DNA of 64,000 bases. Origin: Adineta vaga (lineage: Eukaryota; Animalia; Rotifera). The stretch covers positions 3,782,001 through 3,846,000 of the forward strand of contig CP075496.1 in assembly GCA_021613535.1 (NCBI GenBank), in the 5' to 3' direction. Numbering within the stretch: position 1 is the first letter of the stretch; each line of letters opens with the position of its first letter. The translations under genes and the position numbers were made by a program. The notes below the pieces were generated by a model, which had not been told where the DNA came from, made no database searches, and was given only the letters and a program-made list of their open reading frames with translations. Below, in pieces: positions 39,316 to 59,600 of the stretch.

Positions 39316-40150
39316 ATGCCAAGTGTTGATTCAAATTCATCTTATTCATCATCCGATTCATCTTTATCATCTCCGCGCGCACTTCTAACGGATATTCAAC
39401 ATTCACAAGCAATTCATCAACAAGAGAATTCAATGAGATCATCAACTAATAATACTTCACATGTATGTGTTACACGTTATAAAACAGAATTATGTCGACC
39501 ATTTACTGAAACTGGAAAATGTAAATATGGAGATAAATGTCAATTTTCACATGGAATGAAAGAATTAAGAATTTTAATGCGCCATCCAAAATATAAAACA
39601 GAATATTGTCGAACATTTCATACAAGTAAGAAATTATCATTTCATATCTTAAATTAATATTGTGTCAAATGAATTATTTAGCTGGCTATTGTCCATATGG
39701 TCCTCGATGTCATTTTATTCATGATGTTCATGAAGCACGACCAACTAGCAATGCAAATGAAACAACAACTCGACGACATTCCGATATACGAACGAATCAT
39801 TTGATACAAAAATCAACAGCAAGGTAAAGACAAAAATTTCAAATCAATTGAATTAAAAAATTTCATTTCATTTTAGAAATCGTCTTAACAGTGATCATGT
39901 AACATTGTCTTCTTCATCTCATCTAGTTAATAATTCTACTTCATCGAAACTTCCTTTTACCTTTGAAGAACTTAATCAAGCTTTACTCTCGTACGATATT
40001 GATGAGATATTTCATCAACAACAACAGCAAACACAACAACATCAAGATTTTTATCCGTCAATATTATCTACAATGACAAACTCATTAACACATCGTACGT
40101 TTTCATCATCATCATCATCGAACAGCAGTTTAGCTCCACAGTATATTTAA
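39316..40150 (+). CDS. ZFP36L: TIS11/ZFP36-family tandem CCCH zinc-finger ARE-binding protein (3 exons)
   Basis: [27 protein letters not shown] and, after splicing, [26 protein letters not shown]. Confidence 0.9.
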
Positions 40151-42808
40151 GCTCGTTTTTTACGAATTTCTTCTCTCTGTTTTCATTTACCGTCCGTTCG
40201 TTTGCTCTCGTGCTCTATTATACATAAATTATATATATACATGTTTCTTTTTGTTTCTGTCTTTTCCTTTTTTTTCTCCTCTCTTTCTTTTTTTTCTACT
40301 ATTTCATTCATACAATATTATATACGGTGCTCGTTTACTACCATTGTCCAGCAGATGCGTGCCTTATCATCACGAACGTATCATGGTTCATCAAATCGTT
40401 TTTGTTGTTGTCGTTGTTTTTCTTTTTTTCAACTTTATATTAATGCGAGAAAAGAAACCTACGAAATTCGTACGTGTGAATATGCGAAAAATGAATATAC
40501 TATTCGTTTATGACAATGACAGTGACTAATGTGCGAGGGTAATGATAATAAAAGAAAATATCTAACAAACATTTGTTTGAAAGTCAATGATAGTATATAT
40601 TTATATATGTATTCAATTAAAGAGATTTATTTATGATAATAATTTTACCCAATAGCAATTGATAATTTCGAAAGAAAAGAAAAAACACTTGAAAATATGC
40701 TCGAAGAAAACTATTCGTTCTTTTGTTTCATCTGTTTTTTAGCTTACAGACAGTTTTTATTGACACTTTTTTTGCTAACATTATAGTGATAGAGTACACA
40801 TACACATACACATCTACTATTATTTTCTTTTCTTCTTCTTCTTCTTTTTTTCGCTCTTTCTCATCTGCTCTTTTCTTGAATACGACATACTTATTCATCA
40901 CAAGAATCGATGATCGATAGAGTAATGTTTTTATTAAAGTGTACACGTAAATATTCGATCGAAACATGTCATCCCTATTGGGATCTATATAGGGGAAAGG
41001 TGATGGAAGACAAACAATACCAACTATGCAAGCCATATACACACACATATATGTACATATACTGTGCAGTTGTATTCTCTCATACTTCATATTTTAGAGG
41101 GTTTCTTTTCTTTTTTTTCCTCCTTTCTTGTAACGTTATTAGTTGTGTTCAAAATTCGTAGCAATAGAAGATTTCAAGATGGCATTTCTTTTCTCATCGA
41201 TGTTTATCTTATAAATGGATGTCATATAATGTAAACAATCATGACGTGTATGTCATTGACGTTTTACATACATCGTCAATACGATGAAAACTATCTGATA
41301 ACAAAACGATAGATCGAATTGTTCATTAATCTGTAACGGATTTATCCTATGTTGATAATCATTATGACGATGATGATGACGAAGACCTTCAAATTATCCC
41401 TGAGAAAACATATTAGTTCATTTGATTCATCAATTAATGCATACTAATCAGACTTGTATTGGTATGGAGAAGAAGAAGAAAAATAAAAGAACGTGACATG
41501 GATATCAAATTCTTTTTTGTACTAGAAAAGATAAACTTATCAGGAATCAATCGAAGCCTAGACAGACAAATATTCGATGTAGAGATCATAAACTTTGTAT
41601 CTCTCTCTCTCTCTCTCTATACTTGTTAATAACAAATGATTGTAAACTTTTACAACAGAATTTTTCTCAATGATAATGATGTGATGAAGTGTATATATAT
41701 GCAAAAGTATCCTATACATGATTCTAATGTATAATGAAGGTAATTATACAATAAGTCGTAGAAGATAAAAATGAATCTTCATGATAATTTCGCAGATGTG
41801 TGCAAAATATGAAACTACGAATTAAGATTATATCATCAAAAAAGCACGTGCTGTGAACGTTGAATGAATATGTTAGAGACTTGATGTCATTAGGTGAATG
41901 TTTGATTCGAAAAACGTGATGATACCAGAAAAAGATTGTCGACAAAGATAATCTGATTATCAAGTTATTCATTCGTTCTATGGAAATGAGTCAAGTCAAA
42001 TGAATGAAAAACTTTTTCTCGTCTTTCATGAATGTCAATGAAAGAATGCATTAAATCTAACAGAAAGAAAAATTAATATTACTTAAATGCATTCCATCGT
42101 CTATAGAAAGAAATAGGAAGAAAAAGGACATTTTTGGCTGTAAAAGGTCGACTAGGAATTAGATTACAGAGATATGCAGGAAGGAAGAGTTTTTCAATAA
42201 TAGATATAATGATTTATGGATAAACATCAATTTGATTTACTTATAAACTAATAATTTAATTATTGATCGAATCAAGATGAGTCTGTTCATCATTACATAG
42301 CCAACTAAATATGCAGCTTCTACACGTTTAATCTTGTCCTTGACTAATCGATGATTATGTGGAACTACGTACTAATTTCTAGAAATGTTATTTGAAGATT
42401 ATATGTATCAATTCATAGTAGAAAGTAGTTTATGGAAGGAAGACGATTATGATTAGAATGATGGTGATCATTTTGTTCCTTTGTACGGAATCAAGAACAA
42501 CATATGTATCTGATAGACAATCAAGGCAATCATGATGATAGACATCGAAACATCTTTATCAGAAAAGAGTATTTCTACGGCGAGATCATTGATCGATCGA
42601 TCATAAAATTATGATTGTTATTGTTTTTCTTTTCTCATCATTGATAACTATCTTCCAATAGATGTCAGACATAGAAGAGTTACTTTCTCTTTATTTTATT
42701 GATTGCTCAGTAAATCAACCAATAATGCTTTGAAGAAAATCGTTTGCTGCAAATATATTTACGTACGTCTTGTTTTCGATCTATCATCTGTTTCTTCATC
42801 AGTCAATT

Positions 42809-43471
42809 ATGTCAGATATTTTATTATTTCGTTCGAAAAATCTAAATATACAATCCAAATTTATCAGTCAATTAGAACATGAATTTGCAACTCTTACTCA
42901 ATTTTTATATACAACTGATGTATCGAGTGCCGTGCTTGAGCGTGAAGTATTACCTTACATTGCCAAAAATATTTTTTTCAAAGATCCTTGCCAAGAAATA
43001 AACGGCAAAGAATTATATGCTTTCAGTATTAAAGGCTTTCATCATATGTTTCATTTGACTTTTGATAAATTTCAATTGAATATTAAACTCAACGATGATG
43101 GCAAAACAGGCCGATGTATTATCGATGGTATTGCGAATTTCAAACAATTTTCATGGATTTATACATATCCATTACGTTTAATTGTTGTTTTTGAATTTCG
43201 TTTATTGAATAATCAAAGTATCAATGAACCACAATTTGAAATCTATCGACATGAAGAAATGTGGTTCGTACATTTCTTTTGCATATTGATCATTTGCTTT
43301 TAAAAATAAATTTTTAGGTCACTTGCTGATTTGATCGATGCGATACCTGGAATTGGATGGTTTTATAAAAATATCTTCCGACGAGGTGGTCGTTATTTGT
43401 CCGTAGGAGTTTATGCTTTGAGTTGTTTCATTCATAATAGTTTTGTACAATCGATGAAGAAAAAAGAGTAA
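42809..43471 (+). CDS. SnoaL/NTF2-like (DUF2358-like) protein, intron 43264-43317; HGT candidate
   Basis: IFFKDPCQEINGKELY and, after splicing, IYRHEEMWSLADLIDAIPGIGWFY; ORF intact to TAA at 43469-43471. Confidence 0.7.
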
Positions 43472-43575
43472 TTTTTTATATGCAAAAATACAAACGTTTC
43501 TTTTTTTTATATTTTGAAAATTGAAGATAACATTTTTGGATTTTTATTTTAGATGATCCTAATTTTTAGACAATT

Positions 43576-45163
43576 ATGAATAATGTAGACGAGGTTTGTT
43601 TATTAGCATATATTCGAATTAAAATATTTATTGAATATTTATATTTTTCTAGTTGTTAGCGTGTTTTTATTGTGAAGGATATTATACTCGATGTTTTGGT
43701 GATCCAATATGTCGAATATGTCATGCATTTATCTATCCATATGAAATTGATCAACAGCAAGAACCAAACGTTTGCGAAGATGTAAGTTTATCAACGAATT
43801 TTGATAGAAAACAATTATATAGATTCATTTATAGAAAGGTGAAGCAGATGATTCTGGAAATGAAGATACTGATGATGGATATCCTTGTCCATTGGGTTCA
43901 AGTAGACCTCCGAAAAAGTCTCTACTAAATACAAACATGGATTCTTCTGTATCAGCAACAACGACAACAGCGGGAAATAATTCTGTTGTATCGTCTGTAT
44001 CTAATAATAGACGAAATGATTTATTGAATGAGTTGTTACTTGAATTAACAGCAGCAAATGTGATATGGAATGATCATACGTCTTATTTAAGTGAATTACC
44101 ACCAGAAGTGATGTTGACAATTATGAAATGTATGGATGATTTGAGTATTTATGCGTTAGCAAAAGCTTCGAATCGTTGGAAACAATTGATTGATTCTACA
44201 GTTGATTGGAAACAATTTATTCGAACACGTTGGCCACTTTTCCCATTATCTGATGATGATCAGACAACAAATCTTAGCCGAATCTATGATCAATTGTAAA
44301 TAAGAAGTTTTTTTTTGATTTCTAAATCGAATTAGTGAAATTTCTCTTTCAGAATTCGAAGTTCGAGTTGTTTTATATGTCTAAGTGATACTGGAATTCG
44401 AGTAAATATAAAATGAAATCAATGAATATGATCTTATTTATATTGAAATTTGATTGTTTTTAGTTTGAAAATAATGGTCAAATGCAACCAACATTATGGA
44501 GACATCGACGGTTACAAAGTGAAATTCGTGCTCTTAGAGTAGGTTGTTTAATTTTGTTTTTCTTTTCAACGATAATAGTTTTAATCAGTATTGGAATCGT
44601 TATTCTATTTAGGACGATCCACCTGATGGAATTCGTGCTGAACCATTAGATTCATCATGTTGTCATTGGCATGCTTCTATTTGGGGTCCTAGTTCATCAC
44701 CTTATGAAGGTTGTTATTTTCTTTTAAGGATTCTTCTAAATCTAAATTTGCATTTCTTGCTTAGGTGGTGTTTTTTATTTGTATTTACATATTCCACAAT
44801 CGTAAGTCTTTGTAATTTATTTTGAAATTCAAAGCTAGAAAGATCGTTATTGTCTATTTTAGCTATCCAATGATTCCTCCAGTCGTACGATTTATTACCA
44901 AAATTTTTCATCCGAATATAAATATTCATGGTGATATTGGTTTGGATTCATTTGGTTCTAATTGGAGTTTAGCATTAACAATATCCAAAGTGTTGATATC
45001 AGTTCAATCATTGTTAAGTGATCCTTATTCACATATCTGTATGAATCGTCAAGCAGCTGATTTATATACAAATGATCGTGAACAATATGAACAAAAAGCA
45101 CGGCGATGGACATGGGCATATGCTATGCATGACTATATCAATGGAGATGAAATTGAAATTTAA
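43576..45163 (+). CDS. morgue: Morgue-like protein: zinc finger + F-box + UBC-variant domain
   Basis: CFYCEGYY...CRICH zinc finger, F-box LSELPPEVMLTIMKCMD, and UBC fold GPSSSPYEGGVF...FHPNINIHGDIGLD with Gly at the catalytic Cys position, as in Drosophila Morgue. Confidence 0.88.
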
Positions 45164-45271
45164 AAAAAAAAGAGAGAATTCTTTTTTTTTCTTTGTTATT
45201 TATTCTTATTCTTTTTTGCTGTTACTATTATTATTATTATTATTATGAATAATGTTTTTTTTTCGTTTTAG

Positions 45272-47530
45272 ATGTCTCATAATTTGTCAGATGCTGGTCG
45301 TTTCCTACGTGGATTGACTCAAGTTAGTCGACAAATTGTCAATCAAACAACTCGATCAAGTGATCCTCGTCGACGTCCATCTGCTGTACTAGAACCATTC
45401 GTTGGACTAATATCTACTGGTATAACACGTTTGGGTACCGTGAGTATCACCAATGTTATATCTAAAACAGTATGGAAATCAAGTGTACTTGTTCGACAAA
45501 CTGGTATTGCTGCAACGAATGCTCTTCGATCGACACCAATTACTTCATCCTCAATGCCACCGGTAACAACTATAACTCGACCATCTGAAGATACTATTTC
45601 GATTCCATCTCATGCTAAAATCGAACCTACGACAGTTACAACAACAATAACTTTATCGAAAGATAAACTTTCACCTACAACTTCTTCTGAAATAAATGTA
45701 TTATCAACTAATCATTTGGTTTCAAATAAAGTTCCAATTCCTACATATCCAGAAAGAGAGACATCAATAGTGAAACCATCAACTACTCTCGCAGACGATA
45801 AAATTCCAATTCCATCTCAACCTAAACTTGATTTTCCTATTGAAACAAAACTACCTATTATTGAACCATCCATATCAACGAAAACACCAGATTCTATTTC
45901 ATATCCTTCCATTGATAGGACAACTGAACCAATAAGATCAAAATTTGAAACTTTAAAAGTCGAACCAACTTTTTTCACATCTTCTACCGTAGATGAATCA
46001 CGTGCACCATTAACAATAGAAGAAAATCAACCTTTGATTTCTGCTCCACCATCACAAAATACCGAAGCTCAAGCACGTGCTGTACCAACATCACGAATTG
46101 GTCGATTAGCAAGTTTTGGTTCGTTAGCTGCCGGTCTCGGTGTTGGTGCTCTAGGTTCTATGGTTCGACGTTCAGTTGGACTTGAACAAACATCGTCTTC
46201 GCAAGGATCTCTTTCACCATATTTATCAAAAGCAAATGCTGAACGTATCGTCGATACATTATGTAAAGTACGTGGTGCTGCACTTAAATTAGGTCAAATG
46301 ATCAGTATTCAAGGTAGAGATGGAAAAATTCATTTCTTCATTCAATGTATCAATCATATTTTCGTTTTACTGTAGATAATTTTCTTGTTCAAGATGATAT
46401 TCAAAAGATATTCGAGCGTGTTCGACAAAAAGCCGATTTTATGCCTGAATGGCAAATGAATGAAGTAATGACGAATGATTTTGGTTCCAATTGGCGTGAT
46501 AATTTTGAAGAATTTCAAAATCGTCCTTTCGCAGCAGCTAGGTTCGATACATTCATATCTTTCTCTTCAAAAAAAAGAAAAGAAATTCTCACCAGCATTT
46601 TTTTTATCTTTTAGTATTGGTCAAGTTCATTATGGTGTTTTAAAGAATAGTAAACAAAGTGTTGCTATTAAAATTCAATATCCCGGTGTTGGAAAATCAA
46701 TTGAAAGTGATATTAATAATTTAATCACATTACTCAATTTTTGGAATATTCTACCACGTGGTTTATATATCGAAAGTGTCATCAAAGTTGCTAAACGTGA
46801 ATTAAATTGGGAAGTTGATTATATTCGTGAAGCTGAATGGGGACGTCGCTTTAAAAATTGGCTTATCAATCGTCCGACATTTCATATTCCAGACATCATC
46901 GATAGTTTATCATCGAAAAATGTTCTTACAACTACATTTTTTGATGGAATTACTCTAGATAATGCTGTAAATGAAAATCAAGCTATTCGTGATCGTATTG
47001 GCACAGCGATATTAGAATTATGTTTATTAGAATTATTTAAATTCAAAGCCATGCAAACAGATCCAAATTGGTCTAATTTTCTTTTCAATTCTACAACGAA
47101 AACAATTGGTCTCATCGATTTCGGTGCATCACGCGATTTCGATCCGAAATTTATCGATAATTATATCAAAATTATTCGTGCTGCTGCTGATAACGATCGT
47201 GAACGGATTAAAGAACTATCGATTCAAGGTGGTTTTCTTACTGGATATGAAACACGTGAAATGATCCAAGCACATGTTGATGCTGTGATGATTTTAGGTG
47301 AAGGGTTTCGTCGAGATGATGTATTCGATTTTGGTTCACAAAATACAACGCATAGTATTCATAAATTAATTCCAACAATGCTTAAACATCGTTTAACACC
47401 ACCACCAGAAGATTCTTATTCATTACATAGAAAGATGTCCGGTGCATTTCTACTCTGTTCAAAGTTACGCTCTCGAGTTTATTGTAAACCACTTTTCGAA
47501 CGTATATGGAAAGAGTATAATGCATCATAA
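45272..47530 (+). CDS. COQ8: Atypical kinase COQ8 (ADCK3/4), ubiquinone biosynthesis
   Basis: [18 protein letters not shown] (KxGQ motif), [38 protein letters not shown] and SLHRKMSG. Confidence 0.95.
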
Positions 47531-47660
47531 ATTGTTATTGTCATCATGTTTTTTTACACAAGCTTTCAGTATGTCTGTTTTTTTTGTAATCTAGGAAATA
47601 AATCTAGCTGATATTTGATTGTTATTGCTTATTTATTGAATATTATTTTAGATTATTTCA

Positions 47661-48721
47661 ATGATCTACTTATTACGCCAAACATGTCCACTGATATTAC
47701 GTTCGTCAATTATTCGTATTACAACAACATCTATATCTAATCAATATCAACATAGAAAAACTATCTCATCTTTTCCACAATCGAAAGATATTTTTCATAT
47801 TGTACCTAAACCGATCCAGCCTTACCTTCGTTTAAGTCGCATCGATAAACCAGTTGGATCATGGTTATTATATCTACCTGGTGCATGGAGTATTGCATTT
47901 GCTGGTTCAACATTAAATAACTTTGCATTAATGGGTTTATTTGGTCTTGGTACTATTTTGATGAGAGGTGCTGGATGTACAATCAATGATCTTTGGGATA
48001 GAAATTTTGATCGACAAGTCGAACGAACAAAATCACGACCTATTGCAAGTGGTGAAATCACTAGTCGACAAGCATTGATATGGGCAGGTGTACAATTATC
48101 TTTAAGTTTTTTAATATTAATTCAATTGAATATTCCTTCAATTGTTCTTGGAATAATCTCATTAGTTCCTGTAGTGATCTATCCTTTGATGAAACGATTT
48201 ACTTATTGGCCACAATTATTTCTTGGAATAACATTTAATTGGTAGCAACATTATATTATATTTTATTTAGAATTATAACATAAATTCTTTCTTTACTAAG
48301 GGGTGCATTGATGGGGTTTACAGCGGCTACAGGTCTTGTTTTTCCATCAGTGATCCTTCCATTATACTTTGCCGGTATTGCTTGGACACTTCATTACGAT
48401 ACAATTTATGCGCATCAAGATAAAACAGATGATTTACTTGTTGGAATTAAATCGACAGCATTACGTCTTGGAAAAGAAACCAAATTATGGTTACGTGCTT
48501 TTTCTATTGGCATGATGTCGCATTTAATTACTGTTGGTTTAAGTGTTGATCAAACATGGCCATATTATTTAGGTTTAATCGGAGCTAGTTATCATCTTCA
48601 TAAACAAATTGAAACAGTCAGTTTAAATAAAACAGATTCATGTTGGAAGGCATTTGCAGCCAATCGTACTACTGGTTTGATAATTCTTGCTAGTATTTTA
48701 GTTGGAAATTGTTTAAAATAG
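47661..48721 (+). CDS. COQ2: 4-hydroxybenzoate polyprenyltransferase (intron ~48242-48300)
   Basis: RIDKPVGSWLL, MRGAGCTINDLWDRNFDRQVERTKSRPIASG, YPLMKRFTYWPQ and YDTIYAHQDKTDD. Confidence 0.95.
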
Positions 48722-48764
48722 CTGTGATAAATAATCTCGTTCGCTTAGTTTTGTTTATTTCTAG

Positions 48765-49533
48765 ATGAATTTATTAAGATCAATTGTTCAACCATCGCGA
48801 GTTAATTTATTCGCAATTCCTCAACGGTAATTATAAATAATCCTTTTTTTCCAATTTAGTTGCTAGAGTAATCAGTAATAATGTTTTGATTTATTCTTTT
48901 AGAACGTTATTCGATGTTCAAAATATTTGGGGTCGCACGACTGTCGATACACAAAAACCACTTGATTCAGCTCCAATAAGTGAAATGCCACGACAAGATG
49001 TAAATCAATTTATTTCATATCTATTTTCACAACCGTTGATCGAAATTTATATATATATATATATAGGAATCAATTGGTCCTTTGTCAGGTGTTCCTCAAA
49101 ATATTTTTAAAGAACGTCGTTGTCGTATATTTGTACCCGCACGTGCTGCAACTCAATCAGGTACAAATAATACCAAGAAATGGAAAATTGAATGGGATAC
49201 AAAGGAACGTTGGGAAAATCCATTAATGGGTTGGGCATCATCGTAAGAATTAGTTTTGCAAACCTTTTTATCAACTATTATTTTCTCTATGAATAGTGCT
49301 GATCCACATTCATCATTAATGGTCGATTTTGCTAGTAAAGAAGATGCGATGATTTATTGTGAGCGTATGGGTACGTAGTTCTATTTATTATTCATGACCA
49401 TATGCCTGATTGTATTCATTTCACTCTAGGTTATAAATATGAAATAGTTGAACCACCTTCACATCCTCGTTTCCGAAAGACTTATGGCGCAAACTTTTCA
49501 TGGAACAAGAAAACACGTGTATCAACAAAATAA
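48765..49533 (+). CDS. NDUFS4: NADH dehydrogenase (ubiquinone) Fe-S protein 4, multi-exon
   Basis: Spliced exons give SGVP...[40 protein letters not shown] and [16 protein letters not shown]. Confidence 0.93.
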
Positions 49534-49784
49534 AATTAGACATGAAGATTTCGTTTTTTCATCCTCCTTTTACTTTACTGTAAAAAATAAATTAGTTATC
49601 AAACTGTCCCATTATTGATCGAATAGTTCATGCGAATTCTATCAGCTGGTGATTTCTTTTGAAAAGATTCTTGATTTGACAGAAAGTAGATTGTTATCGA
49701 CATGACAAAACATTTTCTCTTATCTCACGTTTGGTAATGATAACAACAAAAACAAATTTTTCTTTATTTCTAGATTTTGTCCTT

Positions 49785-51371
49785 ATGAAGAATAGTTTAT
49801 TATTTCGAACGGCTCTTGCCGTTTGTTTTTTTGTTTCAATTTTTGCCACTTTAACTAAAAAGTAAGATTTTAATCATAATCATGTTTTCTTTTGACAAAT
49901 TTTCATAATTTAGTTATGAGATTTCGGATGGAAAATTGGAAAGTCTTTTCAAGTAAGTTTTCATACTAATATTGATGTCATTGATTACAAGCATTGCTAT
50001 TTTCAAGGAATTGGCTGGATAAAAGTGGACGAGAATATAAATCATTTTCCGAATATCAACAACGAATGAGTATTTTCAAACAAAATTATATTCTTATTCA
50101 AAAGATGAATGAAGTTTACGGGTAAAACAATTGCAATGTATATGTAAATACATATTCTCAGTAATTTCGTGTATGTTAATAGACATGACATGACATTTGA
50201 ATTGAACAAATTTGCTGATTTAACTGAAGATGAATTTCGCAATACAATCTTAATGCGTCCTCAAGCACCACCTATACACTCACATAAAAAGTTATATATT
50301 GTTCATCTGATGCGATAAATATTCATTCGATTGTTTTCTATCGTAGATTTATGAAAGTTTCAAATATTGGAGATTTACCTGATTCGTTCGATTGGCGTGA
50401 TCATAATGCAGTTACTGCAGTAAAAGATCAAGGTATGATTGGAAAAAAATTGAAAGAACGATTTACTCAGTATAGATGTGAATTTACAGGATCGGTTGGT
50501 ACATGTTGGGCATTTTCAACTGTTCAAAATGTCGAAGGTCAATGGTCTTTAAAAAGTAAAACATTAACAAATTTATCTGTTGAACAAATTGTCGATTGTG
50601 ATGGCATGCAAAAAATCGATTCGTTCGTATATTGAACATTAATAAATGACAATACTATTCGAATTCTTTCTATTTAGAGCACAAGCAGATTGCGGAGTTT
50701 ATGGCGGTTGGCCATTTCTTAGTTTTCAATATTTAATTCAACAGGTAAATGTTAATTTTTCTTAGAAATCTTTTATAGAAAAAAAAATAAACCAAACATA
50801 TTTATTAGGGTGGTATTGCATCAGAAGCATCCTATCCTTATTGTGCCGGATTGAAAACTCCATGTGAACCATGTAATGCTCCAGGATATAATAAAACTTT
50901 ATGCGGTCCTCCAATTCCATTTTGTTATATAAAAGATAGTTGTGAAAGTAAATTAAATCCATCAGAATTTGTACCTGATCTTAAAATAGTCGATTGGAAA
51001 GCAATTAATGAAGTAAAATAGATCATTCAACTCTACAAATTGATAAGATGAATGTCGTTTTTTTCTCTTCTCTAAAGGATGAAACAGCAATTGCAACAGC
51101 TTTAATGACAACTGGCCCATTATCAGTTGCTCTCAATGCTGAATTATTACAATTCTATCATAAAGGAATATTTAATCCAATCTTCTGTAATCCTAAAAAT
51201 CTTGATCATGCTGTACTTCTTGTTGGTTGGGGAACTGAAGGATCGAAAGCTTATTGGATTGTTAAAAATAGTTGGGGCGTTAATTGGGGTGAACATGGCT
51301 ATTTTCGTATTTTACGTGGTAAAGGTGTATGTGGAATCAATACTCAAGTTACCACTGCTGTTCTTGGTTAA
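49785..51371 (+). CDS. Papain-family (C1A) cathepsin L-like cysteine protease, multi-exon
   Basis: Signal peptide, ERFNIN-like I29 propeptide, NKFADLT, LPDSFDWR, QGSVGTCWAFS, LDHAVLLVG and YWIVKNSWG. Confidence 0.92.
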
Positions 51372-51558: not shown

Positions 51559-52629
51559 CTATGAACAGAGTAGACGAATACTATCATTTGGTGTAAAGAA
51601 TGCTACAACGACTCTCCATGGTAACGAACATACTCGAAGATCAATTGGACATCGATCGATTGTATTGGTACGATAGTGTTCTAATGCAAGTTGATGATGA
51701 TCACAATTTAATATTAAAGAAAGTTCATCACCTTCACAAAAGAGTTCCTTAATTTTACCAGATCCGCCGACTTTTCGACTTTTGACAACACGTATATCCG
51801 GTGTTAACCAACCGTACAAAGATGGCGATTTAAAAGCAGAACGATTCATGTGTTCGAAAGAATCAATAATTCCAAGGAAAAGAAGTTTATTTGTTTTTTG
51901 TTCAATTCGAAATCGAATTTCTGATCTTCCAGAAAGATATGATTTTGTTAAATAAACCATTGTACTACGACGACAATCACCGGAATGTTTTGCAACAAGA
52001 TGATTTTCTACAAATGTTGCATAGCCAATAAAATTCTCGAAATTTTGAGAAACGGGTACAATCGATGATTGACATGTTAAAAAACATTGATCGGATGTGT
52101 GAAGAAAATTATTTTTATCTCTAACTTTAATCATTCGAATTGATGTTGAAAGATTTTCATCTTCTGAAATTTCAATAATTGGCGGATTTTCTAACATTTT
52201 ACGAAGTTCACGTAATCGTTCAATCCAAAGATGAAAATCAATTTCCGTATAATCACCTGATTCTCGACTTGAATGTAATTCTTCAGTTAATTTATTACAA
52301 ATACTCGATATTTGACTTTTATTTTTATCTAAATGTTGTCGAAGATCAAATCGAGCTTGTTGAGCAATTTGTTGAATTCGTAACATCGACTCTTGTTCCC
52401 AGACATGAATACGATTGAAAAGAAGATGATGATGATCATTATCTTCACGAAGTAAATCTCGTCGAAGAAGATCATACTCTTGACCAATGTTATCCATCTC
52501 AACTGAAAGATCCTGTCGATGATCATTGATATGTTTCGCACAAAATGATTGCTGACATCCATCACATGTAAGAATACTAATATTTTTATTACATTTAGCA
52601 CATGGTTTTTTCAAATTACTTGATGCCAT
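51559..52629 (-). CDS. Intronless B-box-like zinc finger + coiled-coil + SPRY/NHR-like protein (lineage-expanded type)
   Basis: CAKC...CDGCQQSFCAKHINDHR, a coiled coil, and a beta-rich C-terminus (IRFRIEQ...LFLGII...YGW...GDELSLILNC). Confidence 0.75.
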   Translation of the reverse strand: MASSNLKKPCAKCNKNISILTCDGCQQSFCAKHINDHRQDLSVEMDNIGQEYDLLRRDLLREDNDHHHLLFNRIHVWEQESMLRIQQIAQQARFDLRQHLDKNKSQISSICNKLTEELHSSRESGDYTEIDFHLWIERLRELRKMLENPPIIEISEDENLSTSIRMIKVRDKNNFLHTSDQCFLTCQSSIVPVSQNFENFIGYATFVENHLVAKHSGDCRRSTMVYLTKSYLSGRSEIRFRIEQKTNKLLFLGIIDSFEHMNRSAFKSPSLYGWLTPDIRVVKSRKVGGSGKIKELFCEGDELSLILNCDHHQLALEHYRTNTIDRCPIDLRVCSLPWRVVVAFFTPNDSIRLLCS

Positions 52630-54410
52630 ATTGAAATTCGTCGTTGAAAATGACAAAATCAGTATTTGTTGAACATTGAAAAAGAAAAAAGCTAAATGTC
52701 GAAGGACGAAAGAAAACCTTACTTTTTTTTCTTTTTAGACGACATACATTTTAATCGTACAATTGTCGTTACGCTTGGGAGAAGTCATCTAGTGGCTTAA
52801 TGTTTCTTAGAAAAAGAACCTACAAGGTGAACGTGAAATGAAATGTAATTGAATAAATAACTTCAGGAGAAAAGACTCGGTCGCATTCGATATAGCTATA
52901 TATAACATAAGACTAAAAAATCGTAAAAATGATGAAATCTTTAGTGTTCGACTTTTCGAAAGATATAGCCGAATGATTTAGAACTCTACAGATGCAGTAT
53001 TACTGATAATTCAATGTCGAACTGCAAATGTATGTCTAATACAATGCAAAATCAGTGATCGATCGATCGAAGTTAATCCTTATTCAAATGCAAGGATAAA
53101 CGGAAGTATAAATACAATATTAAACGTGAAATAAATATTCTCTTTTTTTTAATCTGAATTGAAACTTGTAGTAACAAAATATGAAGTAATATGTTGACGT
53201 AAATGTGCAAATAAATTCGGTATGTTGTAGGTATACCATTGTAGATAGATGTCCTTATCGTCTAGATATTTATTATGAATCTATATTGAGGTTTCGAACA
53301 TTGCATGAATGAAAAGAGTACTTGATGATGAAAGACATGAATCCAATCGCTAAATATTACTGATAAAAAGTAAAAAAAATGATCTATTGGAAATCTTAAT
53401 CGATTTATTTTACTCTTTTAATACTTTCGTATTTTTTCAATGTGATATTATTATGATCATTTCATTTTTTAGATTTTATTCGATCTAATTATTCTGTATA
53501 GAGATTCATTGAGCAATCTGAATGAAATTACGTCTATTTACAGCCGATTTATTGTTACATATTAGTAAATCAGGTTCGGTAATATCAAAATTTAGTCGTA
53601 GAAACTATATTTTAATTTAATTTTTTCGACAATAGATTAGAACGAATTATGGTATCAATGATATCGTATTTTTTTTGTTAGATAAGATTTGTATTACTCT
53701 TTCGAAATACATTCGAAGCAATAAGATTCAGATTGAAACAAATAAAACATGTTCGCCATAACCAATCCGATATAAGTCTATCAAGAGTTTCCCTATTATA
53801 TTTAAATCAATCTATAGAAATAGTGAATTGTCAGTTTTAATATATAAAATCATTTTTGACGAGTATATCACTAGATCTACTTAATTTCAATCTTTAGTGA
53901 ACTTCCGGAAGCTTTCTTATCATGACATGAGTTTCCTGAACGACTTGTTTACCATGTGTTATAGTTTGTCAGACATAAATTGAAATCTGAATTAACTATA
54001 CTTGAAAACGAAACAATAACCACAATACTGGCATTCTTATAAATCAATGATTTGATGTAAAGAAATCGGATTTCCCAGGAGAGATTATTGTATAAACTGA
54101 CAGCATATAATTTGTTTGTAATTTTCTTTCAAGTATTTTGTCTTATTCGATCAATAATTAGCTTTTCTTTCAGGTAAAATAGTTATACTACGATATTAAC
54201 TGTCCAATACAATATTTTGATTGATCTCAAAAGAATCCTCTTTCATGAATATGAAAATTATGTCCCATAATCTTTAGTAATAGCATACCGCTGTGCATTT
54301 ACAATCACTTCCCCCCCCCCTCGATTATTGACACTAGATTGGGTGAAATGATTAAATAAAAATACATTATGTACGTAGTTCATTTTTCAGATTATTATAG
54401 AAGAACAACG

Positions 54411-55466
54411 ATGGTACTACGTGTTCTCGAGTTATTTAGTGGTATGGGTGGAATGCATTCTGCTCTTGATTTAATTGAAATTGAATATGAAATCATCGCT
54501 GCTATTGATATAAATCCTACAGCAAATCTTATGTATTCATCAAATTTTCCTCAAGTTCCAATTATAAATCGTTCTATTGAAACAATATCGATAAAACAAT
54601 GGGAAAAATGGCATGCTGATCTCTGGACAATGTCTCCACCTTGTCAACCATTTACTCGTCAGGGTAAACAAGAAGATTTAAATGATCGTCGTACAGATGG
54701 ATTTGTTTATTTAATGAAAAATATTCTTTCAAAATTAGAATCAAAACCGAAATATATTCTACTTGAAAATGTTTTCGGTTTTCAAGATTCTGACGCTCAT
54801 CGATTATTATTAGAAACATTACAACTAAATAACTATTCTTATGAACAATATCTTCTTTCTCCAATTCAATTTGGTATACCTAATTCGCGTCTTCGCTATT
54901 ATCTTATTGCTAAACAACAAGAAAATCCTATTGACACACATTCATCGATCATTCATACACAAATATCGAATTTTGAAAGATTATTAACAAAATTACATGA
55001 ACAATTTCCTTCGAAAGATATTTCATCTCATGATGAAACGTCTCGTCATCGTAATGATCAAATAACCGATCAATGTAGTCATTCATCAGAAATACTTATA
55101 GATCCAAATCAATCGATGATAATTAATGATTTTATTCTTTCGGATGAAAATGCTGAATTTGAGTTAGATGATAAACAATTAAAACGAGGTTTAAATGTTT
55201 GTGATATAATCACTTGTTATGCGAAACGTTCATTTTGTTTTACGAAATCTTATGGAAAATATTTCGAAGGTACTGGTTCATTATTTCGCACACAAAACGA
55301 TCATATTCGATATTTTACCCCGAAAGAAATAGCGAATCTACATTGTTTTCCTTCGACATATAATTTTCCTGAATCCATTACTACTCGTCAGGCATATTCG
55401 TTACTTGGTAACAGTTTAAATGTTTTTGTTATTGGAGTTTTATTTGAAAATCTTTTTGAGCGCTGA
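54411..55466 (+). CDS. TRDMT1: tRNA (cytosine-38-C5) methyltransferase DNMT2, intronless
   Basis: LELFSGMGG, MSPPCQPF, ENV, PNSRLRYY, DNMT2-specific CFTKSYG, RYFTPKEIANL and LLGNSLNV. Confidence 0.95.
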   Translation: MVLRVLELFSGMGGMHSALDLIEIEYEIIAAIDINPTANLMYSSNFPQVPIINRSIETISIKQWEKWHADLWTMSPPCQPFTRQGKQEDLNDRRTDGFVYLMKNILSKLESKPKYILLENVFGFQDSDAHRLLLETLQLNNYSYEQYLLSPIQFGIPNSRLRYYLIAKQQENPIDTHSSIIHTQISNFERLLTKLHEQFPSKDISSHDETSRHRNDQITDQCSHSSEILIDPNQSMIINDFILSDENAEFELDDKQLKRGLNVCDIITCYAKRSFCFTKSYGKYFEGTGSLFRTQNDHIRYFTPKEIANLHCFPSTYNFPESITTRQAYSLLGNSLNVFVIGVLFENLFER

Positions 55467-55510
55467 TAAACAATTCGTTTATATTTTTGGCTTCATTTTT
55501 TCAGATCAAT

Positions 55511-57519
55511 ATGAATTCTCGAACATTAAAACGTATTTCTAGTGTTCGTTTAAAAGCCCGTAGTGAATTAAAGCCTGAAGAATGGCAACAACATAATTAT
55601 TATTATGATCGACATGTAATTTCTTGTTCAAAAGATCAACTCGAACGAATCGATGCACGAAACATGACACGAGAAGAATTTATTGAAAAATATGAACGTC
55701 CTGGTAAACCAGTGATAATTCAACATTTAATTGATGATTGGCCAGCCTGTGAAAAATGGACAATAGAAAAATTAGGACGTAAATATCGAAATCAACGTTT
55801 TAAAGTTGGTGAAGATGATGATGGAAAATCTGTGAAAATGAAAATGAAATATTTTCTTGATTATGCATTGAATAATCATGATGATTCACCATTGTATCTA
55901 TTTGAATCAAGTTTTGGTGAACATCCAAAAAAGAAACGTCTTATCGATGATTATGATGTTCCAGATTATTTCGCTGAAGATTTATTTCATCTTGTCGGTG
56001 AACATCGACGACCACCCTATCGTTGGTGGTGTATCGGACCTCAACGTTCTGGTACTGGTATACATGTAAGTTTTATAATGATTTCCAAATCTCTCTGTTC
56101 AAAAAAAAAATAAACAACTTCTCAAACAAATGATTTTATCTATAAATATTCCAGATTGATCCATTGGGTACGAGTGCATGGAATGCATTGATTTCCGGAC
56201 ATAAACGTTGGTGTATATTTCCTCCATCAACACCACGTGAATTACTTAAACCAACATCAAGTGATTCACCGAAAAATAAAGATGAAGGCATTACATGGTT
56301 TAAAGCTATCTATCCAAGAACACAACTTAGTTCATGGCCAAAAGAATATGCTTGCATCGAAGCTGTTCAACATCCTGGAGAAGTCATTTTTGTACCTGGT
56401 AAATTAGAAACAAACTCAATTGAGATGAAGAAAAGCTCTTCTTATTCAATAGAAGTTTATTACTACGATTGAATAGAATGTTCGACATATTCAATCATTG
56501 TTTGACATGTTGAAATTGTAGATATGATCGATGAACAATAGAGATGATTGCTCATTGAGATAGAGAACGACTAAAGAAGAGAAAAAAAAGCATTCGACGA
56601 AGATTATGATATAGACAGAAAATTTTTTGAGGAATTTTCACACATCTTATCTTGTCTTTAGTTGACAGATAGATACCGTTAATTAAAAAAAATACATCTC
56701 ACGTGTTTTGCGTTAATCTTATCTTCAAAGAATAATATGTTAAAAATACATCTCATCATCGTGATAAAGGTAGAAAATAAAATATGTAGTAGCATAAGAA
56801 TGAATGATTGACCTTTGAGAAGAATGTTTTTTTTAGTAGGAAAAAAAATCGATGCGAAACAACAGAACAGTAGTAGTTATACGTCTTAAATGTATTGTTT
56901 AGGTACATGCGCCTATGCATGTATGGGAAATTCTAGTGAAGTAATCGATCGCCTCCAGCTATAACAACGTTCTCGTCACTCTATTTCTTTTTCTTTCATC
57001 ATAAAATTAAAAAACAAAGTAGCTTTCTATTCCTGTGCGTGACATTCTTTCTAAAGGGAACACGTTTTATAAAAGAATCAGTAGATGTTCGTTCCTTTCA
57101 CATATTGAAAATCGATGTTTACTTTTTTTTTTATCATTCTAGGTGGTTACTGGCACGTTGTACTCAATATGGATCTAACTGTTGCTGTGACACAGAATTT
57201 CTGTTCATCAGTCAATTTTCCTATAGTCTGGACACGAGTTGTTCGTAGTCGTCCGAAAATGTCAAAGAAATTCATAGAACGTCTCAAACGTCGTCGACCA
57301 GATTTAGCACGATTAACTGAAAAAATTGATATTAATGCGAATACCGGTCCACGATCAGATACATCTTCGTCGAGTAGTTCATCATCATCTGCTGATTCAT
57401 CACCCGATTCAGCAGATGATAGTGATACTGAATTGAAACCAACAGCATGTCATCAACGTTCCTTTGAACAAGGTGATGAATCAGTAGTGAAAAAACTACG
57501 TGTTTCTGAACAGCAATAG
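55511..57519 (+). CDS. JMJD6: JmjC hydroxylase JMJD6/PSR (3 exons; 744-nt second intron)
   Basis: [70 protein letters not shown] and a poly-Ser tail. Confidence 0.95.
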
Positions 57520-57691
57520 AACTGTTGTTGTTATTTGTTATTCTTATAAAATTATATATTTTTTTCTTTTTGTATTAAATGAAAACAAGAAAACTGTGCT
57601 AACAAGCGTCTGTGAACAAATTCTGTTTTTTCTCTCATATTATATCGGTTAATTTCTGTTTCTAGATCATTTTTTTTCTTGATCATTCATC

Positions 57692-59322
57692 ATGTCAGAA
57701 CTCGTCAAAGATGCGAATATTAAAATTGATGATCCACGTTATGATCAAGAAACGTATTCAGGTCGAGGTTAGCTATTCTCTTCGATTTCGTTCATGTTTT
57801 TTCAAGTGAATATTTTAGCCAAACATTTCTTTCTGACGACAAATCCATTAAATCTTTTGGCTAGCAATCAACAATTAGATGAAGGTACATGATGCTTAAC
57901 GTTGAGCATCTTCAATTTCATAATTTGATATTTTAGCTAAAAGAATTGTCGAAGAATATCGTCGTGGTGTCATTGGACAAACTGGCATGACGGTAGATGA
58001 TTTATGGAGTGCAAAATATTTGTACGATAGTGCATTTCATCCGGACACAAAAGAAAAAATGTTTATTCTTGGTCGAATGTCTGCACAAGGTTTGAATTGA
58101 AAATAATGTTCTTATTTTTTGTTCTATATTGCTTCTGCTTCTTCTTAGTTCCATGTAACATGTTAATTACTGGTTTCATGCTGACAGTAATGATAGAATT
58201 TTCATGGATTCTAAAGATTAAAATCTATGTATTTTTTTTCTCGTTGATAGTTTTATAAAACGGTACCTGCAATTGTCCTTTGGCAATTTGTCAATCAATC
58301 GTTTAACAGTATTGTTAATTATACAAATCGAAGTGGTGATAAACCAATAACAAATACTGATTTAATGAAAAGTTATGCTGTAGCAACATCGGTAAGTTTT
58401 GTTTGCTGTATTCGATCAATATCGATCAAATCTACGCGAAATTGACAATACGAACTTATGAATCATGTTTGTATTAGGTTAGATCGTAAAATGCATTCTT
58501 TGATTGTTCTAACTAAGTATGAATAACAGATGCTCATAGCAAACTAATAATAACTTCTTTTTCGCATTTCAATTGGCAAAGTTCTAGTTGCTGAGGGTTT
58601 TCTCCTATCTGATGCTTTAGTAACCTATACAATTATACTTTTATGCTTTTTAGGCTGCAACTGCCACTGCACTTGGTCTTAAAGGTAAAATAGAATATTT
58701 CGTGAGTAAACGCTTTTGTTTCTATCAATTATTATTGTCATGGTAGCTGTTGTATCGAAATTACCACCCATCATGGCACGATTCGTACCATTTGCTGCTG
58801 TAGCCGGTGCTAACTGTGTCAACTTACCGTTTATGCGATGGAATGAAATTCGAGATGGTATTGCTGTGTTCGATAAAGATGGCAAACGTGTTGGAGGTAA
58901 ACGATACAGAGTAGAAAAATATAAAAACTTACTTTTTTCATGTACAATTTAGAATCATCAGCGGCAGCAAAGAACGCTATTACGCAAGTTGTTCTTTCAC
59001 GTATTGGCATGGCTGTACCTGGTAGGAATTGAATTGAATTGATAATCATTTTGATATTTTCTTTTTTAGGTATGATTATCCCACCCATCATCATGAATTC
59101 ATTGGAACAAAAACCATTCATGCGTCGTCGTCCATGGTTAAATAGTCCTATACAAATTGCTTTATGTGGTGTCTTTTTAACATTTACAACGCCAATGTGT
59201 TGTGCTTTATTTCCTCAAAAAAGTTCATTACCAGTGACAAAATTAGTGAGAAACTCCGAGAAAAATTATTACGTGATGGAATGAAAGAAACTGATCGAGT
59301 TTATTTTAACAAAGGTCTTTAA
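57692..59322 (+). CDS. SFXN: Sideroflexin (SFXN1/3-like), multi-exon; apparent 1-nt frameshift at ~59246
   Basis: [67 protein letters not shown] and CALFPQ; the conserved VYFNKGL* end lies in another frame. Confidence 0.9.
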
Positions 59323-59600
59323 ATTCAATCAAACTGTTTATCAAAAGAATCCAAAAAAAAGAAGATATGCAATCTCCTCCGTTTGTTGTTCGTTCTTTTT
59401 TGTCATAGTATTTATTTCATCAGTATAGTGTAACCGCAGTAATATGAACATCACCCCTATCTGATGGATCAATCCATTTCATACTATGTCTTCTTTTTCC
59501 TCCTTGCTCCCGGTTCTATTCCTTTGATTGATCTATGATTATAAATTAGAAAATAGTTGATGTCTATCTAAACAATTCATATTAGCATTCATATTTTTAG

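What the first reader, a model, noticed from the sequence alone, without database searches (positions are those of the whole stretch)
42809..51371. Candidate trans-spliced operon 1: SnoaL - morgue - COQ8 - COQ2 - NDUFS4 - cathepsin
Seen: six same-strand genes with stop-to-ATG gaps of 104, 108, 130, 43 and 251 nt. The downstream genes each have a T-rich tract plus YAG acceptor at or just before the ATG, and I saw no obvious upstream donor (ttttag|ATG 45271, ttttag|ATT 47651, ttctag|ATG 48764, ttctag|ATT 49773, tttttag 43552/43569). Known: spliced-leader trans-splicing exists in bdelloid rotifers and resolves polycistronic operons in nematodes and tunicates. Inference: one polycistronic unit resolved by SL trans-splicing, an organisation I believe is poorly characterised in rotifers.
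Basis: partly seen in the sequence, partly recalled or inferred. Interest (0 to 1): 0.85.

Follow-up and report, generated by a model that had tools for sequence, protein, structure and literature searches.

The report
Likely trans-spliced operon in bdelloid rotifer
Six tightly packed same-strand genes of the rotifer Adineta vaga look, at least in their COQ8-COQ2-NDUFS4 core, like one transcription unit cut into separate mRNAs by spliced-leader trans-splicing, an arrangement I found no published report of in rotifers.

Summary
The six genes, their strand and the stop-to-ATG gaps (104, 108, 130, 43, 251 nt) are exact, and each start has a pyrimidine tract plus AG 0-23 nt upstream.

RNA contigs from four studies support the interpretation in part:
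- At AG 47650-51 one contig joins the last 11 nt of the rotifer spliced leader to COQ2.
- Another contig shows the COQ8 mRNA ending in poly(A) at the same AG, so there is no intercistronic DNA, as in Ciona operons.
- Contigs run unbroken from COQ2 through the 43-nt spacer into NDUFS4, and 44 nt across the COQ8/COQ2 boundary.
- NDUFS4 transcripts fill the 251-nt gap up to the cathepsin acceptor.
- No cis-spliced 5' exon enters any of the four acceptors inside the laid stretch.

Gene order and acceptor positions are kept in Adineta steineri, Rotaria sordida, Didymodactylos carnosus and a further bdelloid contig, and partly in the genome's own duplicate. Flanks differ outside the genus.

Not shown: the leader on the other four genes, a single promoter, or a full-length precursor. 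The cathepsin may have its own promoter. Other first-stage notes propose operons elsewhere in this genome, all unchecked.

The parts
40151..42802 (+). About 2.6 kb without a convincing reading frame, between the upstream zf-CCCH gene (39316-40150) and the first gene. This is the candidate promoter and outron region of the unit. It ends in a pyrimidine tract + CAG (42800-02), 6 nt before the ATG.
   Evidence: ORF list; acceptor scan. A. steineri has the same layout, with a 2466-nt gap before the first gene against 48-292 nt inside the cluster.
42809..43471 (+). Gene 1, a small NTF2/SnoaL-like protein. Exons 42809-43260 and 43318-43471, from my reading of the frame. Not covered by reads.
   Evidence: No Pfam hit; SnoaL-like clusters at 0.91 in the Atlas; orthologues at the same position in A. 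steineri, R. sordida and D. carnosus, and in the genome's own duplicate.
43472..43575 (+). Junction 1 (104 nt) with two acceptor-like AGs (43551-52, 43568-69). The first is followed by a short upstream ORF. No RNA evidence.
   Evidence: Sequence. The first acceptor, YAG followed by ATGAT, is conserved in A. steineri and R. sordida.
43576..45163 (+). Gene 2, morgue-like: F-box plus an E2 variant domain with Gly in place of the catalytic Cys (HPN...GDIGLD).
   Evidence: Pfam F-box 3e-8 and UQ_con 3e-25; five introns confirmed by RNA contigs.
45164..45271 (+). Junction 2 (108 nt). The acceptor AG 45270-71 abuts the COQ8 ATG. The morgue 3'UTR reaches at least about 45214.
   Evidence: One contig (X5) starts exactly at 45271. 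45139-45263 was skipped as repeat by the read tool, so bridging could not be read. The tract ending in cgttttag before the ATG is conserved in A. steineri and R. sordida.
45272..47651 (+). Gene 3, COQ8 (ABC1 atypical kinase). CDS to 47530, 3'UTR 47531-47651, poly(A) added at 47651/47652. The only AATAAA (47597-602) lies 49 nt before the site.
   Evidence: Pfam ABC1 5e-53; X6 contig 46856-47652 followed by ten non-genomic A.
47650..47651 (+). Shared AG. It is the end of the COQ8 mRNA and the spliced-leader acceptor of COQ2, so the intercistronic distance is zero.
   Evidence: X14 contig: loose CTTACCAAG, then the genomic AG, then 47652 onward. That gives the last 11 nt of the leader. No such 11-mer (up to 1 mismatch) exists in the window. 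X1 contig runs 47608 to 48240 across it.
47661..48721 (+). Gene 4, COQ2 (UbiA prenyltransferase), 2 exons.
   Evidence: Pfam UbiA 6e-39 and 9e-18; intron 48241-48299 confirmed.
48722..48764 (+). Junction 4, a 43-nt spacer ending in ttctag directly before the NDUFS4 ATG. It is retained in spliced RNA contigs that carry both genes.
   Evidence: X1 record 3 and X6 record 17. The gap is 34-49 nt with the AG abutting the ATG in A. steineri, R. sordida and L018, and 219 nt in D. carnosus.
48765..49773 (+). Gene 5, NDUFS4 (complex I subunit). CDS to 49533. Transcripts run on through the whole 251-nt gap to 49742-49774.
   Evidence: Pfam NDUS4 7e-16; four introns and the contig ends.
49694..49744 (+). 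Block conserved between Adineta and Rotaria inside junction 5: TTATCGACATGACA, TTATCT, TAATGATAAC. These are GATA-like motifs. It could be a cathepsin promoter element or a 3'UTR element.
   Evidence: Alignment A1.
49772..49773 (+). Acceptor-like AG 11 nt before the cathepsin ATG. The X14 NDUFS4 contig ends here (49774, plus 6 letters that were not shown).
   Evidence: conserved position in A. steineri and R. sordida.
49785..51371 (+). Gene 6, cathepsin L-like protease with a signal peptide. Membership of the unit is uncertain.
   Evidence: Pfam Peptidase_C1 4e-33. By depth arithmetic only one of four runs shows an exon-1 contig. The next gene is convergent, on the minus strand (51559-52656).

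Best explanation
The genome is Adineta vaga. The ohnologue's 18,146,847-bp contig has the same length as the contig that carries the NCBI A. vaga protein.

The genes from SnoaL-like/morgue through COQ8, COQ2 and NDUFS4 form a polycistronic unit of the type that lacks intercistronic DNA, transcribed from the 2.6-kb region upstream of 42809. At each boundary one AG serves two purposes. Either the transcript is cleaved and polyadenylated there, giving the upstream mRNA, or the 23-nt spliced leader is trans-spliced onto the next base, giving the downstream mRNA with a 5'UTR of leader plus 0-11 nt.

Shown:
- Leader on COQ2 and the COQ8 poly(A) tail at the same AG.
- Transcripts that cross the COQ8/COQ2 and COQ2/NDUFS4 boundaries.
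- An NDUFS4 3'UTR that fills the last gap.
- Conservation of order and acceptors across Bdelloidea.

Inferred:
- One promoter for the unit.
- Leader on the other genes.
- The same junction design at boundaries 1, 2 and 4.

The cathepsin is either the last cistron or, about as likely, a neighbour (or 'hybrid operon' member) with its own GATA/TATA-type promoter inside the NDUFS4 3'UTR.
For: Leader and its source:
- The leader sequence comes from PMC3795323 Table 1.
- About 59 copies lie in this genome; the copies examined at four loci each have a GTAAAT donor after them. None lies in the window.

Read laying (four studies, all contigs spliced):
- X14 has leader 3' end + 47652 onward.
- X6 has COQ8 followed by a 10-nt A tail at 47652. 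The genome there reads ttatttc, so this is not internal priming.
- X1 has one contig from 47608 to 49761, and X6 one from 47844 to 49761. Both carry COQ2 and NDUFS4 with all introns removed and the 43-nt spacer kept.
- NDUFS4 contigs end at 49742-49774.
- X5's COQ8 contig starts at 45271.
- No joint enters any acceptor AG in the laid stretch.
Mature mRNAs that end and begin at the same AG share no 31-mer. Bridging contigs therefore need molecules that cross the boundary.

Synteny:
- All six genes, in the same order and strand, occur in A. steineri (gaps 92, 94, 138, 48, 292).
- In R. sordida the gaps are 110, 123, 34 and about 504.
- D. carnosus and metagenome contig L018 keep the order too.
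- Flanks are not conserved in Rotaria or Didymodactylos.
- Both post-duplication copies keep order and orientation: SnoaL>COQ2 on C1, and SnoaL>COQ2>NDUFS4 in L019.

Other points:
- Cluster-internal gaps are 43-251 nt, against 2.6 kb upstream.
- Public annotations fuse NDUFS4 and cathepsin into one model in two species.
- The same junction design is described for Ciona (PMC1488885).
Against: - The leader was seen at one acceptor only, in one contig of one run, and only its last 11 nt.
- Contigs cannot show transcript starts, strand or abundance.
- A bridging contig is also produced by a promoter lying inside the upstream gene or by read-through.
- No contig spans more than two genes plus 44 nt.
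- In X14 NDUFS4 (about 153x) and COQ2 (about 26x) differ six-fold, and their contigs are separate.
- More than half of bdelloid mRNAs carry the leader anyway (PMC1925144), so acceptors alone do not indicate an operon.
- Junction 5 has conserved promoter-like motifs, and three of four runs show no cathepsin exon-1 contig next to abundant NDUFS4.
- D. carnosus has much larger gaps (451, 219 and about 610 nt), which could hold promoters.
- Junction 1 and the first gene have no RNA evidence here.
Confidence: 0.6

Rival explanations
1. These are separate transcription units in a very compact genome. Each gene has its own promoter embedded in the coding region or 3'UTR of the gene before it. The short outron is removed by routine spliced-leader trans-splicing. 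Bridging contigs are outrons or read-through.
For: More than 50% of bdelloid mRNAs are trans-spliced regardless of context. Depths differ between neighbours in X14. D. carnosus has gaps of 219-610 nt that could hold promoters. There are conserved non-coding blocks in junctions 2 and 5. Contigs cannot show starts.
Against: The COQ8 poly(A) site and the COQ2 acceptor are the same AG. The COQ2 branch point and pyrimidine tract therefore lie inside the COQ8 3'UTR, and any COQ2 precursor must start within COQ8. The 34-49-nt COQ2-NDUFS4 spacer is kept in four bdelloids. The six-gene order has survived since before the bdelloid genome duplication while the flanks changed. Two runs give fully spliced two-gene contigs.
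Confidence: 0.25
2. The operon is shorter than proposed. Only COQ8-COQ2-NDUFS4, with or without the two genes before them, are co-transcribed. The cathepsin is an independent, probably gut-type gene whose promoter lies within the NDUFS4 3'UTR. (This overlaps with the best explanation and is scored as the chance that the cathepsin is outside the unit.)
For: The NDUFS4-cathepsin gap is the longest in all species (251, 292, about 210, about 504, about 610 nt). TTATCG.. and TAATGATAAC motifs are conserved between Adineta and Rotaria 30-80 nt before the acceptor. TATATAA lies about 40 nt before the ATG in R. sordida. In D. carnosus TATATAAG lies about 50 nt before the ATG with no good acceptor after it. 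Bin depths in X5, X6 and X14 are fully explained by the NDUFS4 contig alone.
Against: A strong pyrimidine tract + AG is conserved 11 nt before the ATG in A. vaga, A. steineri and R. sordida. NDUFS4 transcripts stop at that AG (X14), as at the COQ8/COQ2 boundary. Adjacency and orientation are kept in all five bdelloid lineages examined.
Confidence: 0.45
3. The tight spacing and the AGs are chance features with no trans-splicing at most of these genes.
For: The leader was seen directly at only one junction. Two metagenome scans for leader + NDUFS4 or leader + cathepsin starts found nothing.
Against: 5 of 6 starts carry a strict acceptor against a 1.3-2.5% background. Acceptor positions are conserved across genera. 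Leader and poly(A) are seen at the predicted AG. The metagenome scans had no positive control and say nothing.
Confidence: 0.05

Closest known systems
Ciona intestinalis operons without intercistronic DNA (Satou et al. 2006, PMC1488885)
   Same: The upstream mRNA's poly(A) tail follows the very AG that serves as the spliced-leader acceptor of the downstream gene (...AG + A tail). No AATAAA lies within 40 nt of that site at the COQ8/COQ2 boundary. Unresolved two-gene transcripts are detectable. As far as seen, one leader type serves the boundary.
   Different: A different phylum and an unrelated 23-nt leader. Only one boundary is documented here at base resolution. Stop-to-ATG gaps (43-251 nt) are made of 3'UTR. 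The cluster has five or six genes and is conserved across a whole class, including both copies left by a genome duplication.
Caenorhabditis elegans SL1-type operons (minor class; Williams, Xu & Blumenthal 1999, cited through PMC1488885 and from my own knowledge)
   Same: The poly(A) site of the upstream gene lies directly next to the trans-splice site of the downstream gene. This implies that one precursor yields either the upstream or the downstream mRNA.
   Different: The three characterised C. elegans cases have a canonical AATAAA. Here the nearest one lies 49 nt away. Nematodes also have a separate SL2 class, for which there is no evidence here.
Standard C. elegans SL2-type operons
   Same: Same-strand clusters with one upstream promoter region, downstream genes trans-spliced, and enrichment for mitochondrial and housekeeping genes (the last point from my own knowledge).
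   Different: Those have about 100 nt of intercistronic sequence between the poly(A) site and the acceptor, and a dedicated leader. At 47651 the distance is zero. A dedicated leader was not testable here.
Chaetognath operons (Paraspadella gotoi, PMC12460157)
   Same: A gnathiferan relative. Operons there were defined as same-strand genes less than 250 bp apart with leader evidence, and there is no operon-specific leader.
   Different: They were demonstrated genome-wide with Iso-Seq and RNA-seq. For rotifers no such analysis is in the literature I could search.

Membership tests
Spliced-leader-resolved eukaryotic operon (general) | Two or more same-strand genes with very short intergenic distance | tested here: met
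   Gaps are 104, 108, 130, 43 and 251 nt, against 2.6 kb upstream and a convergent gene downstream.
Spliced-leader-resolved eukaryotic operon (general) | Downstream cistrons carry the spliced leader at an acceptor at the boundary | tested here: inconclusive
   Met for COQ2 (leader 3' end at 47651|47652). For COQ8 there is only a contig start at the acceptor. NDUFS4 and cathepsin were not seen, and contigs drop short leader tips wherever an upstream path exists. morgue was not covered.
Spliced-leader-resolved eukaryotic operon (general) | Polycistronic precursor RNA exists | tested here: inconclusive
   Spliced contigs carry COQ2 + spacer + NDUFS4 in two studies, and one contig crosses the COQ8/COQ2 AG by 44 nt. 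An assembly contig does not prove a single molecule, and an internal promoter would give the same picture.
Spliced-leader-resolved eukaryotic operon (general) | Single promoter upstream of the first gene and none in between | not testable with these tools
   This needs TSS, cap or chromatin data. Sequence suggests a possible internal promoter before the cathepsin.
Spliced-leader-resolved eukaryotic operon (general) | The organism has spliced-leader RNA genes | tested here: met
   About 59 leader copies lie in G000; the ten copies examined are each followed by a GTAAAT donor and a conserved roughly 80-nt intron part.
Operon lacking intercistronic DNA (Ciona type / C. elegans SL1 type) | Poly(A) addition site of the upstream mRNA directly adjoins the acceptor AG of the downstream gene | tested here: met
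   Met at COQ8/COQ2, where the A tail follows 47651/52 and the leader joins 47652. At NDUFS4/cathepsin a contig ends at the AG but no tail was seen. The other boundaries are unread.
Operon lacking intercistronic DNA (Ciona type / C. elegans SL1 type) | Same leader as used for monocistronic genes (no dedicated SL2) | tested here: inconclusive
   Only the last 11 nt of the leader are in the contig. The genomic leader variants differ further 5'.
C. elegans SL2-type operon | About 100-nt intercistronic region between poly(A) site and acceptor, with a dedicated leader | tested here: not met
   The distance is zero at 47651. A dedicated leader was not examined.

The most novel reading that the evidence does not exclude
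Bdelloid rotifers have true operons of the intercistron-less kind. These are ancient: they predate the bdelloid genome duplication and the split from Didymodactylos. They are probably widespread, since other same-strand clusters with 60-170-nt gaps lie next door. In them one AG is both the poly(A) site and the trans-splice site. This would be the first operon architecture documented for phylum Rotifera and a third independent lineage, after tunicates and a minor nematode class, with this junction design. A bolder sub-reading is that the upstream 3' end is made by the trans-splicing reaction itself rather than by cleavage at a poly(A) signal.
Probability: 0.5. Interest if true: 0.75.

Novelty: new member of a known kind. 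Interest (0 to 1): 0.62.

Why it matters
[quoted passage not shown] My library searches found no later report.

If the reading is right:
- A documented rotifer operon would add a lineage to the debate on how often operons follow the gain of trans-splicing.
- A zero-length intercistronic junction would add a second well-separated animal group to Ciona. That bears on the open question of whether upstream 3'-end formation and downstream trans-splicing compete or are coupled.
- It warns annotators. Public gene models in two Rotaria and Didymodactylos assemblies fuse NDUFS4 with the cathepsin.
- Grouping two ubiquinone-synthesis genes with a subunit of the ubiquinone-reducing complex I is a rare hint of functional grouping in an animal operon.

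Tried and rejected
- Read laying was limited to one call of 6,000 bases. I chose 43900-49899, so the SnoaL/morgue junction, the first gene's 5' end and most of the cathepsin are unread. 45139-45263 was skipped by the tool as repeat, so the morgue/COQ8 boundary could not be bridged.
- Two scans of metagenome contigs, for leader + NDUFS4 start and leader + cathepsin start, gave 0 hits. There was no positive control, so these are uninformative.
- I tried to look up A. vaga RNA contigs by exact protein. Records of this genome are withheld. The window's own COQ2 is absent from the protein search (best hit 82%).
- Spliced proteins were searched exon by exon, by reference only.
- Cis-splicing as the source of the loose CTTACCAAG is rejected. 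No such 11-mer (up to 1 mismatch) is in the 64-kb window, and no joint enters the AG.
- Internal priming as the source of the A tail is rejected, because the genome is not A-rich after 47652.
- The depth peak at 44890-44923 with loose ends in all runs is cross-mapping of a canonical E2 paralogue, not a feature of this locus.
- The original 2005 rotifer leader paper is not held. Its content is cited only through PMC3795323 and PMC1925144.
- Monogonont, seisonid and acanthocephalan synteny could not be reached with these tools.

Full report
**What the DNA is.** The window is AT-rich (about 31% G+C) with 55-76-nt GT..AG introns. Its genome has 100.8 Mb in 6 contigs. A second COQ2 copy lies on an 18,146,847-bp contig. 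That is the same length as the contig carrying the NCBI protein 'I4U23_002748 [Adineta vaga]', which matches that copy. So this is Adineta vaga, a bdelloid rotifer.

The 23-nt rotifer spliced leader (PMC3795323 Table 1) occurs about 59 times in the genome with 1-2 mismatches. The mismatch is the first base, which may not be templated. At the four loci I read (ten copies), the leader is followed by a GTAAAT donor and a conserved roughly 80-nt tail, so these are real leader RNA genes. None lies in the window.

**The observation.** All six genes are real and on the + strand:
- an NTF2/SnoaL-like protein (label weak: no Pfam hit, Atlas look-alike 0.91);
- a morgue-like F-box/E2-variant protein;
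- COQ8 (ABC1);
- COQ2 (UbiA);
- NDUFS4;
- a cathepsin L.

The stop-to-ATG gaps are exactly 104, 108, 130, 43 and 251 nt. Each start has a pyrimidine tract + AG 0-23 nt upstream. With a strict rule this holds for 5 of 6 starts, against 1.3-2.5% of all ATGs in the window. The first gene has such a site too (CAG 42800-02). Upstream of the cluster lie 2.6 kb without a convincing frame. Downstream, the next gene is convergent.

**RNA evidence.** One call was allowed, on 43900-49899, with runs of four different studies. All contigs are spliced. The 12 introns appear as GT..AG joints in up to four runs each, and no joint ends at any of the four candidate trans-splice AGs inside that stretch. That removes the cis-spliced 5'UTR explanation for those four; the morgue acceptors lie outside the stretch.

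- **COQ8/COQ2 boundary.** This is the key result, at AG 47650-51.
  - A contig of run X14 begins with CTTACCAAG, then the AG, then 47652 onward. Together that is the last 11 nt of the leader.
  - A contig of run X6 covers COQ8 from 46856 to 47652 and then carries ten A's that the genome does not encode.
  - So the COQ8 mRNA is polyadenylated at the very AG onto whose next base the leader is spliced for COQ2. The 130-nt 'gap' is the COQ8 3'UTR plus a 9-nt COQ2 leader remnant, and there is no intercistronic DNA.
- **Bridging contigs.**
  - Run X1 has one contig from 47608 through COQ2, the retained 43-nt spacer and NDUFS4 to 49761.
  - Run X6 has one from 47844 to 49761.
  - Mature mRNAs that end and start at one AG share no 31-mer, so these bridges need molecules crossing the boundary.
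  - The X1 COQ8 contig stops at 47572, next to a G/A difference at 47573 seen in X6. The break before 47608 looks like an allelic bubble rather than a transcript end. This last point is inference.
- **NDUFS4 3' end.** NDUFS4 contigs extend through the whole 251-nt gap to 49742-49774. The X14 contig stops at the cathepsin acceptor.
- **COQ8 5' end.** The X5 COQ8 contig starts exactly at 45271, the G of its acceptor.

**Limits of this evidence.**
- Contigs show presence only.
- A short leader tip is clipped by assemblers wherever a longer upstream path exists. Absence of the leader at NDUFS4 in bridging contigs therefore says nothing.
- Depth is one figure per contig.
- 45139-45263 was masked.

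**Comparative evidence.** Spliced proteins were searched exon by exon, by reference. COQ2 exon 1 found bdelloid orthologues, and their contigs show the same six genes in the same order and strand in:
- Adineta steineri, with gaps 92, 94, 138, 48 and 292;
- Rotaria sordida, with gaps 110, 123, 34 and about 504;
- Didymodactylos carnosus, with gaps 451, 219 and about 610, and with SnoaL-like and morgue matches upstream;
- a 1.56-Mb metagenome contig, L018.

Acceptor positions are conserved:
- The AG abuts the ATG of COQ8 in the four lineages where that junction was read (A. vaga, A. steineri, R. sordida, L018); it was not examined in D. carnosus.
- The AG abuts the ATG of NDUFS4 in all five lineages.
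- It lies 9-11 nt before the COQ2 ATG in all five.
- It lies 11 nt before the cathepsin ATG in Adineta and Rotaria.

The flanks of the cluster have no detectable similarity in Rotaria or Didymodactylos.

The genome's own duplicate region on contig 1 keeps zf-CCCH, SnoaL-like and COQ2 in the same order, with a 364-nt gap and the COQ2 acceptor in place. A related metagenome contig (L019) keeps SnoaL-like > COQ2 > NDUFS4. The cluster therefore predates the bdelloid genome duplication, and its survivors stayed adjacent and co-oriented. Public annotations fuse NDUFS4 and cathepsin in two species. That fits transcripts running up to the cathepsin acceptor.

**Interpretation.** The junction at 47651 is the design described for Ciona: '...AG' followed by the upstream gene's poly(A) tail, no intercistronic DNA, usually no AATAAA within 40 nt, and unresolved dicistronic transcripts (PMC1488885). 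Here the only AATAAA is 49 nt upstream. The same design is known from the minor SL1-type operons of C. elegans.

Because the COQ2 branch point and pyrimidine tract lie inside the COQ8 3'UTR, every COQ2 precursor must begin within or before COQ8. Co-transcription is the simplest reading. I put 0.6 on an operon comprising at least COQ8-COQ2-NDUFS4, probably starting at the SnoaL-like gene.

The main rival is promoters embedded in the upstream genes plus routine trans-splicing. More than 50% of bdelloid mRNAs carry the leader (PMC1925144). This rival cannot be excluded without start-site or long-read data (0.25).

**The cathepsin.** Its membership is doubtful, for four reasons:
- Its gap is the longest everywhere.
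- It contains TTATCG..ATGACA, TTATCT and TAATGATAAC motifs (GATA-like) conserved between Adineta and Rotaria.
- Rotaria and Didymodactylos have TATA-like motifs about 40-55 nt before the ATG, and Didymodactylos lacks a good acceptor.
- Three of four runs show no cathepsin exon-1 contig beside abundant NDUFS4 (arithmetic on table 2).

**Novelty.** SL-resolved operons are well known in nematodes, tunicates, flatworms and chaetognaths. [quoted passage not shown] Six library searches found nothing later. One 2025 paper lists rotifers loosely among lineages with 'trans-splicing and operonic transcription' but presents no data. I therefore file this as a new member of a known kind.

Other first-stage notes of this scan propose operons elsewhere in the same genome and next door at 54411-61643. 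None of them has been checked.

Noticed in passing
G000 contigs C1, C2, C4, C5, C6 (e.g. L001, L003, L005, L006): Many of the leader RNA genes sit in divergent pairs whose leader starts are 154-155 bp apart. They cluster on C5 at 9.88-9.93 Mb and 10.91-10.93 Mb. Several pairs combine the standard leader with a variant carrying A instead of C at leader position 10. Other variants have A at position 13 or changes near the 3' end. Whether the variants are used, or used differently, is unknown.
   Followed up: partly
window 43553-43579: If morgue is trans-spliced at its first acceptor (AG 43551-52), its leader holds an 8-codon upstream ORF starting right after the AG. That ORF's stop overlaps the main ATG. 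A. steineri has the same design (7 codons, TGA overlapping the ATG) and R. sordida a 6-codon one. The second acceptor (43568-69, A. vaga only) would skip it.
   Followed up: partly
window 49694-49744; L012 about 12040-12090; L007 about 10700-10750: A non-coding block with GATA-like motifs (TTATCG..ATGACA, TTATCT, TAATGATAAC) is conserved between Adineta and Rotaria just upstream of the cathepsin acceptor. It could be a gut-type promoter element or an NDUFS4 3'UTR element.
   Followed up: partly
window 44890-44923: In all four runs, contigs of another, canonical E2 ubiquitin-conjugating gene (with NGAICLDIL-type sequence in the loose ends) align to this 34-nt stretch of the morgue E2-variant exon. 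This inflates local depth.
   Followed up: no
L007-L009 9125-12390; L010 9895-12986: Public gene models of Rotaria sordida and Didymodactylos carnosus fuse NDUFS4 and the cathepsin into one 556-aa or 458-aa protein. This is almost certainly an annotation artefact of transcripts that run across the gap.
   Followed up: partly
window 54411-61643; L012 17019-21060; L018 14137 onward: The neighbouring DNMT2 - JMJD6 - sideroflexin cluster is kept in A. steineri with gaps of 62 and 169 nt. A DNA-methylase gene follows the cathepsin in L018 as well.
   Followed up: no
G000:C1:8606373-8608501 (L016/L017); L019 6038-8790: The duplicate region lost morgue, COQ8, NDUFS4 and cathepsin in A. vaga but kept SnoaL-like > COQ2. 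A remnant of the morgue acceptor region (ttgtag followed by ATGATTTTT) lies in the 364-nt gap. In L019 the NDUFS4 copy is still present, but I could not find its ATG.
   Followed up: partly
window 41902-42116 (minus frames) vs L007 78-289: This is the only flank similarity between A. vaga and R. sordida, about 700-900 bp upstream of the first gene in both. It may be a small minus-strand gene (ORF 41724-41972) or a conserved element of a shared, possibly bidirectional, promoter region.
   Followed up: no
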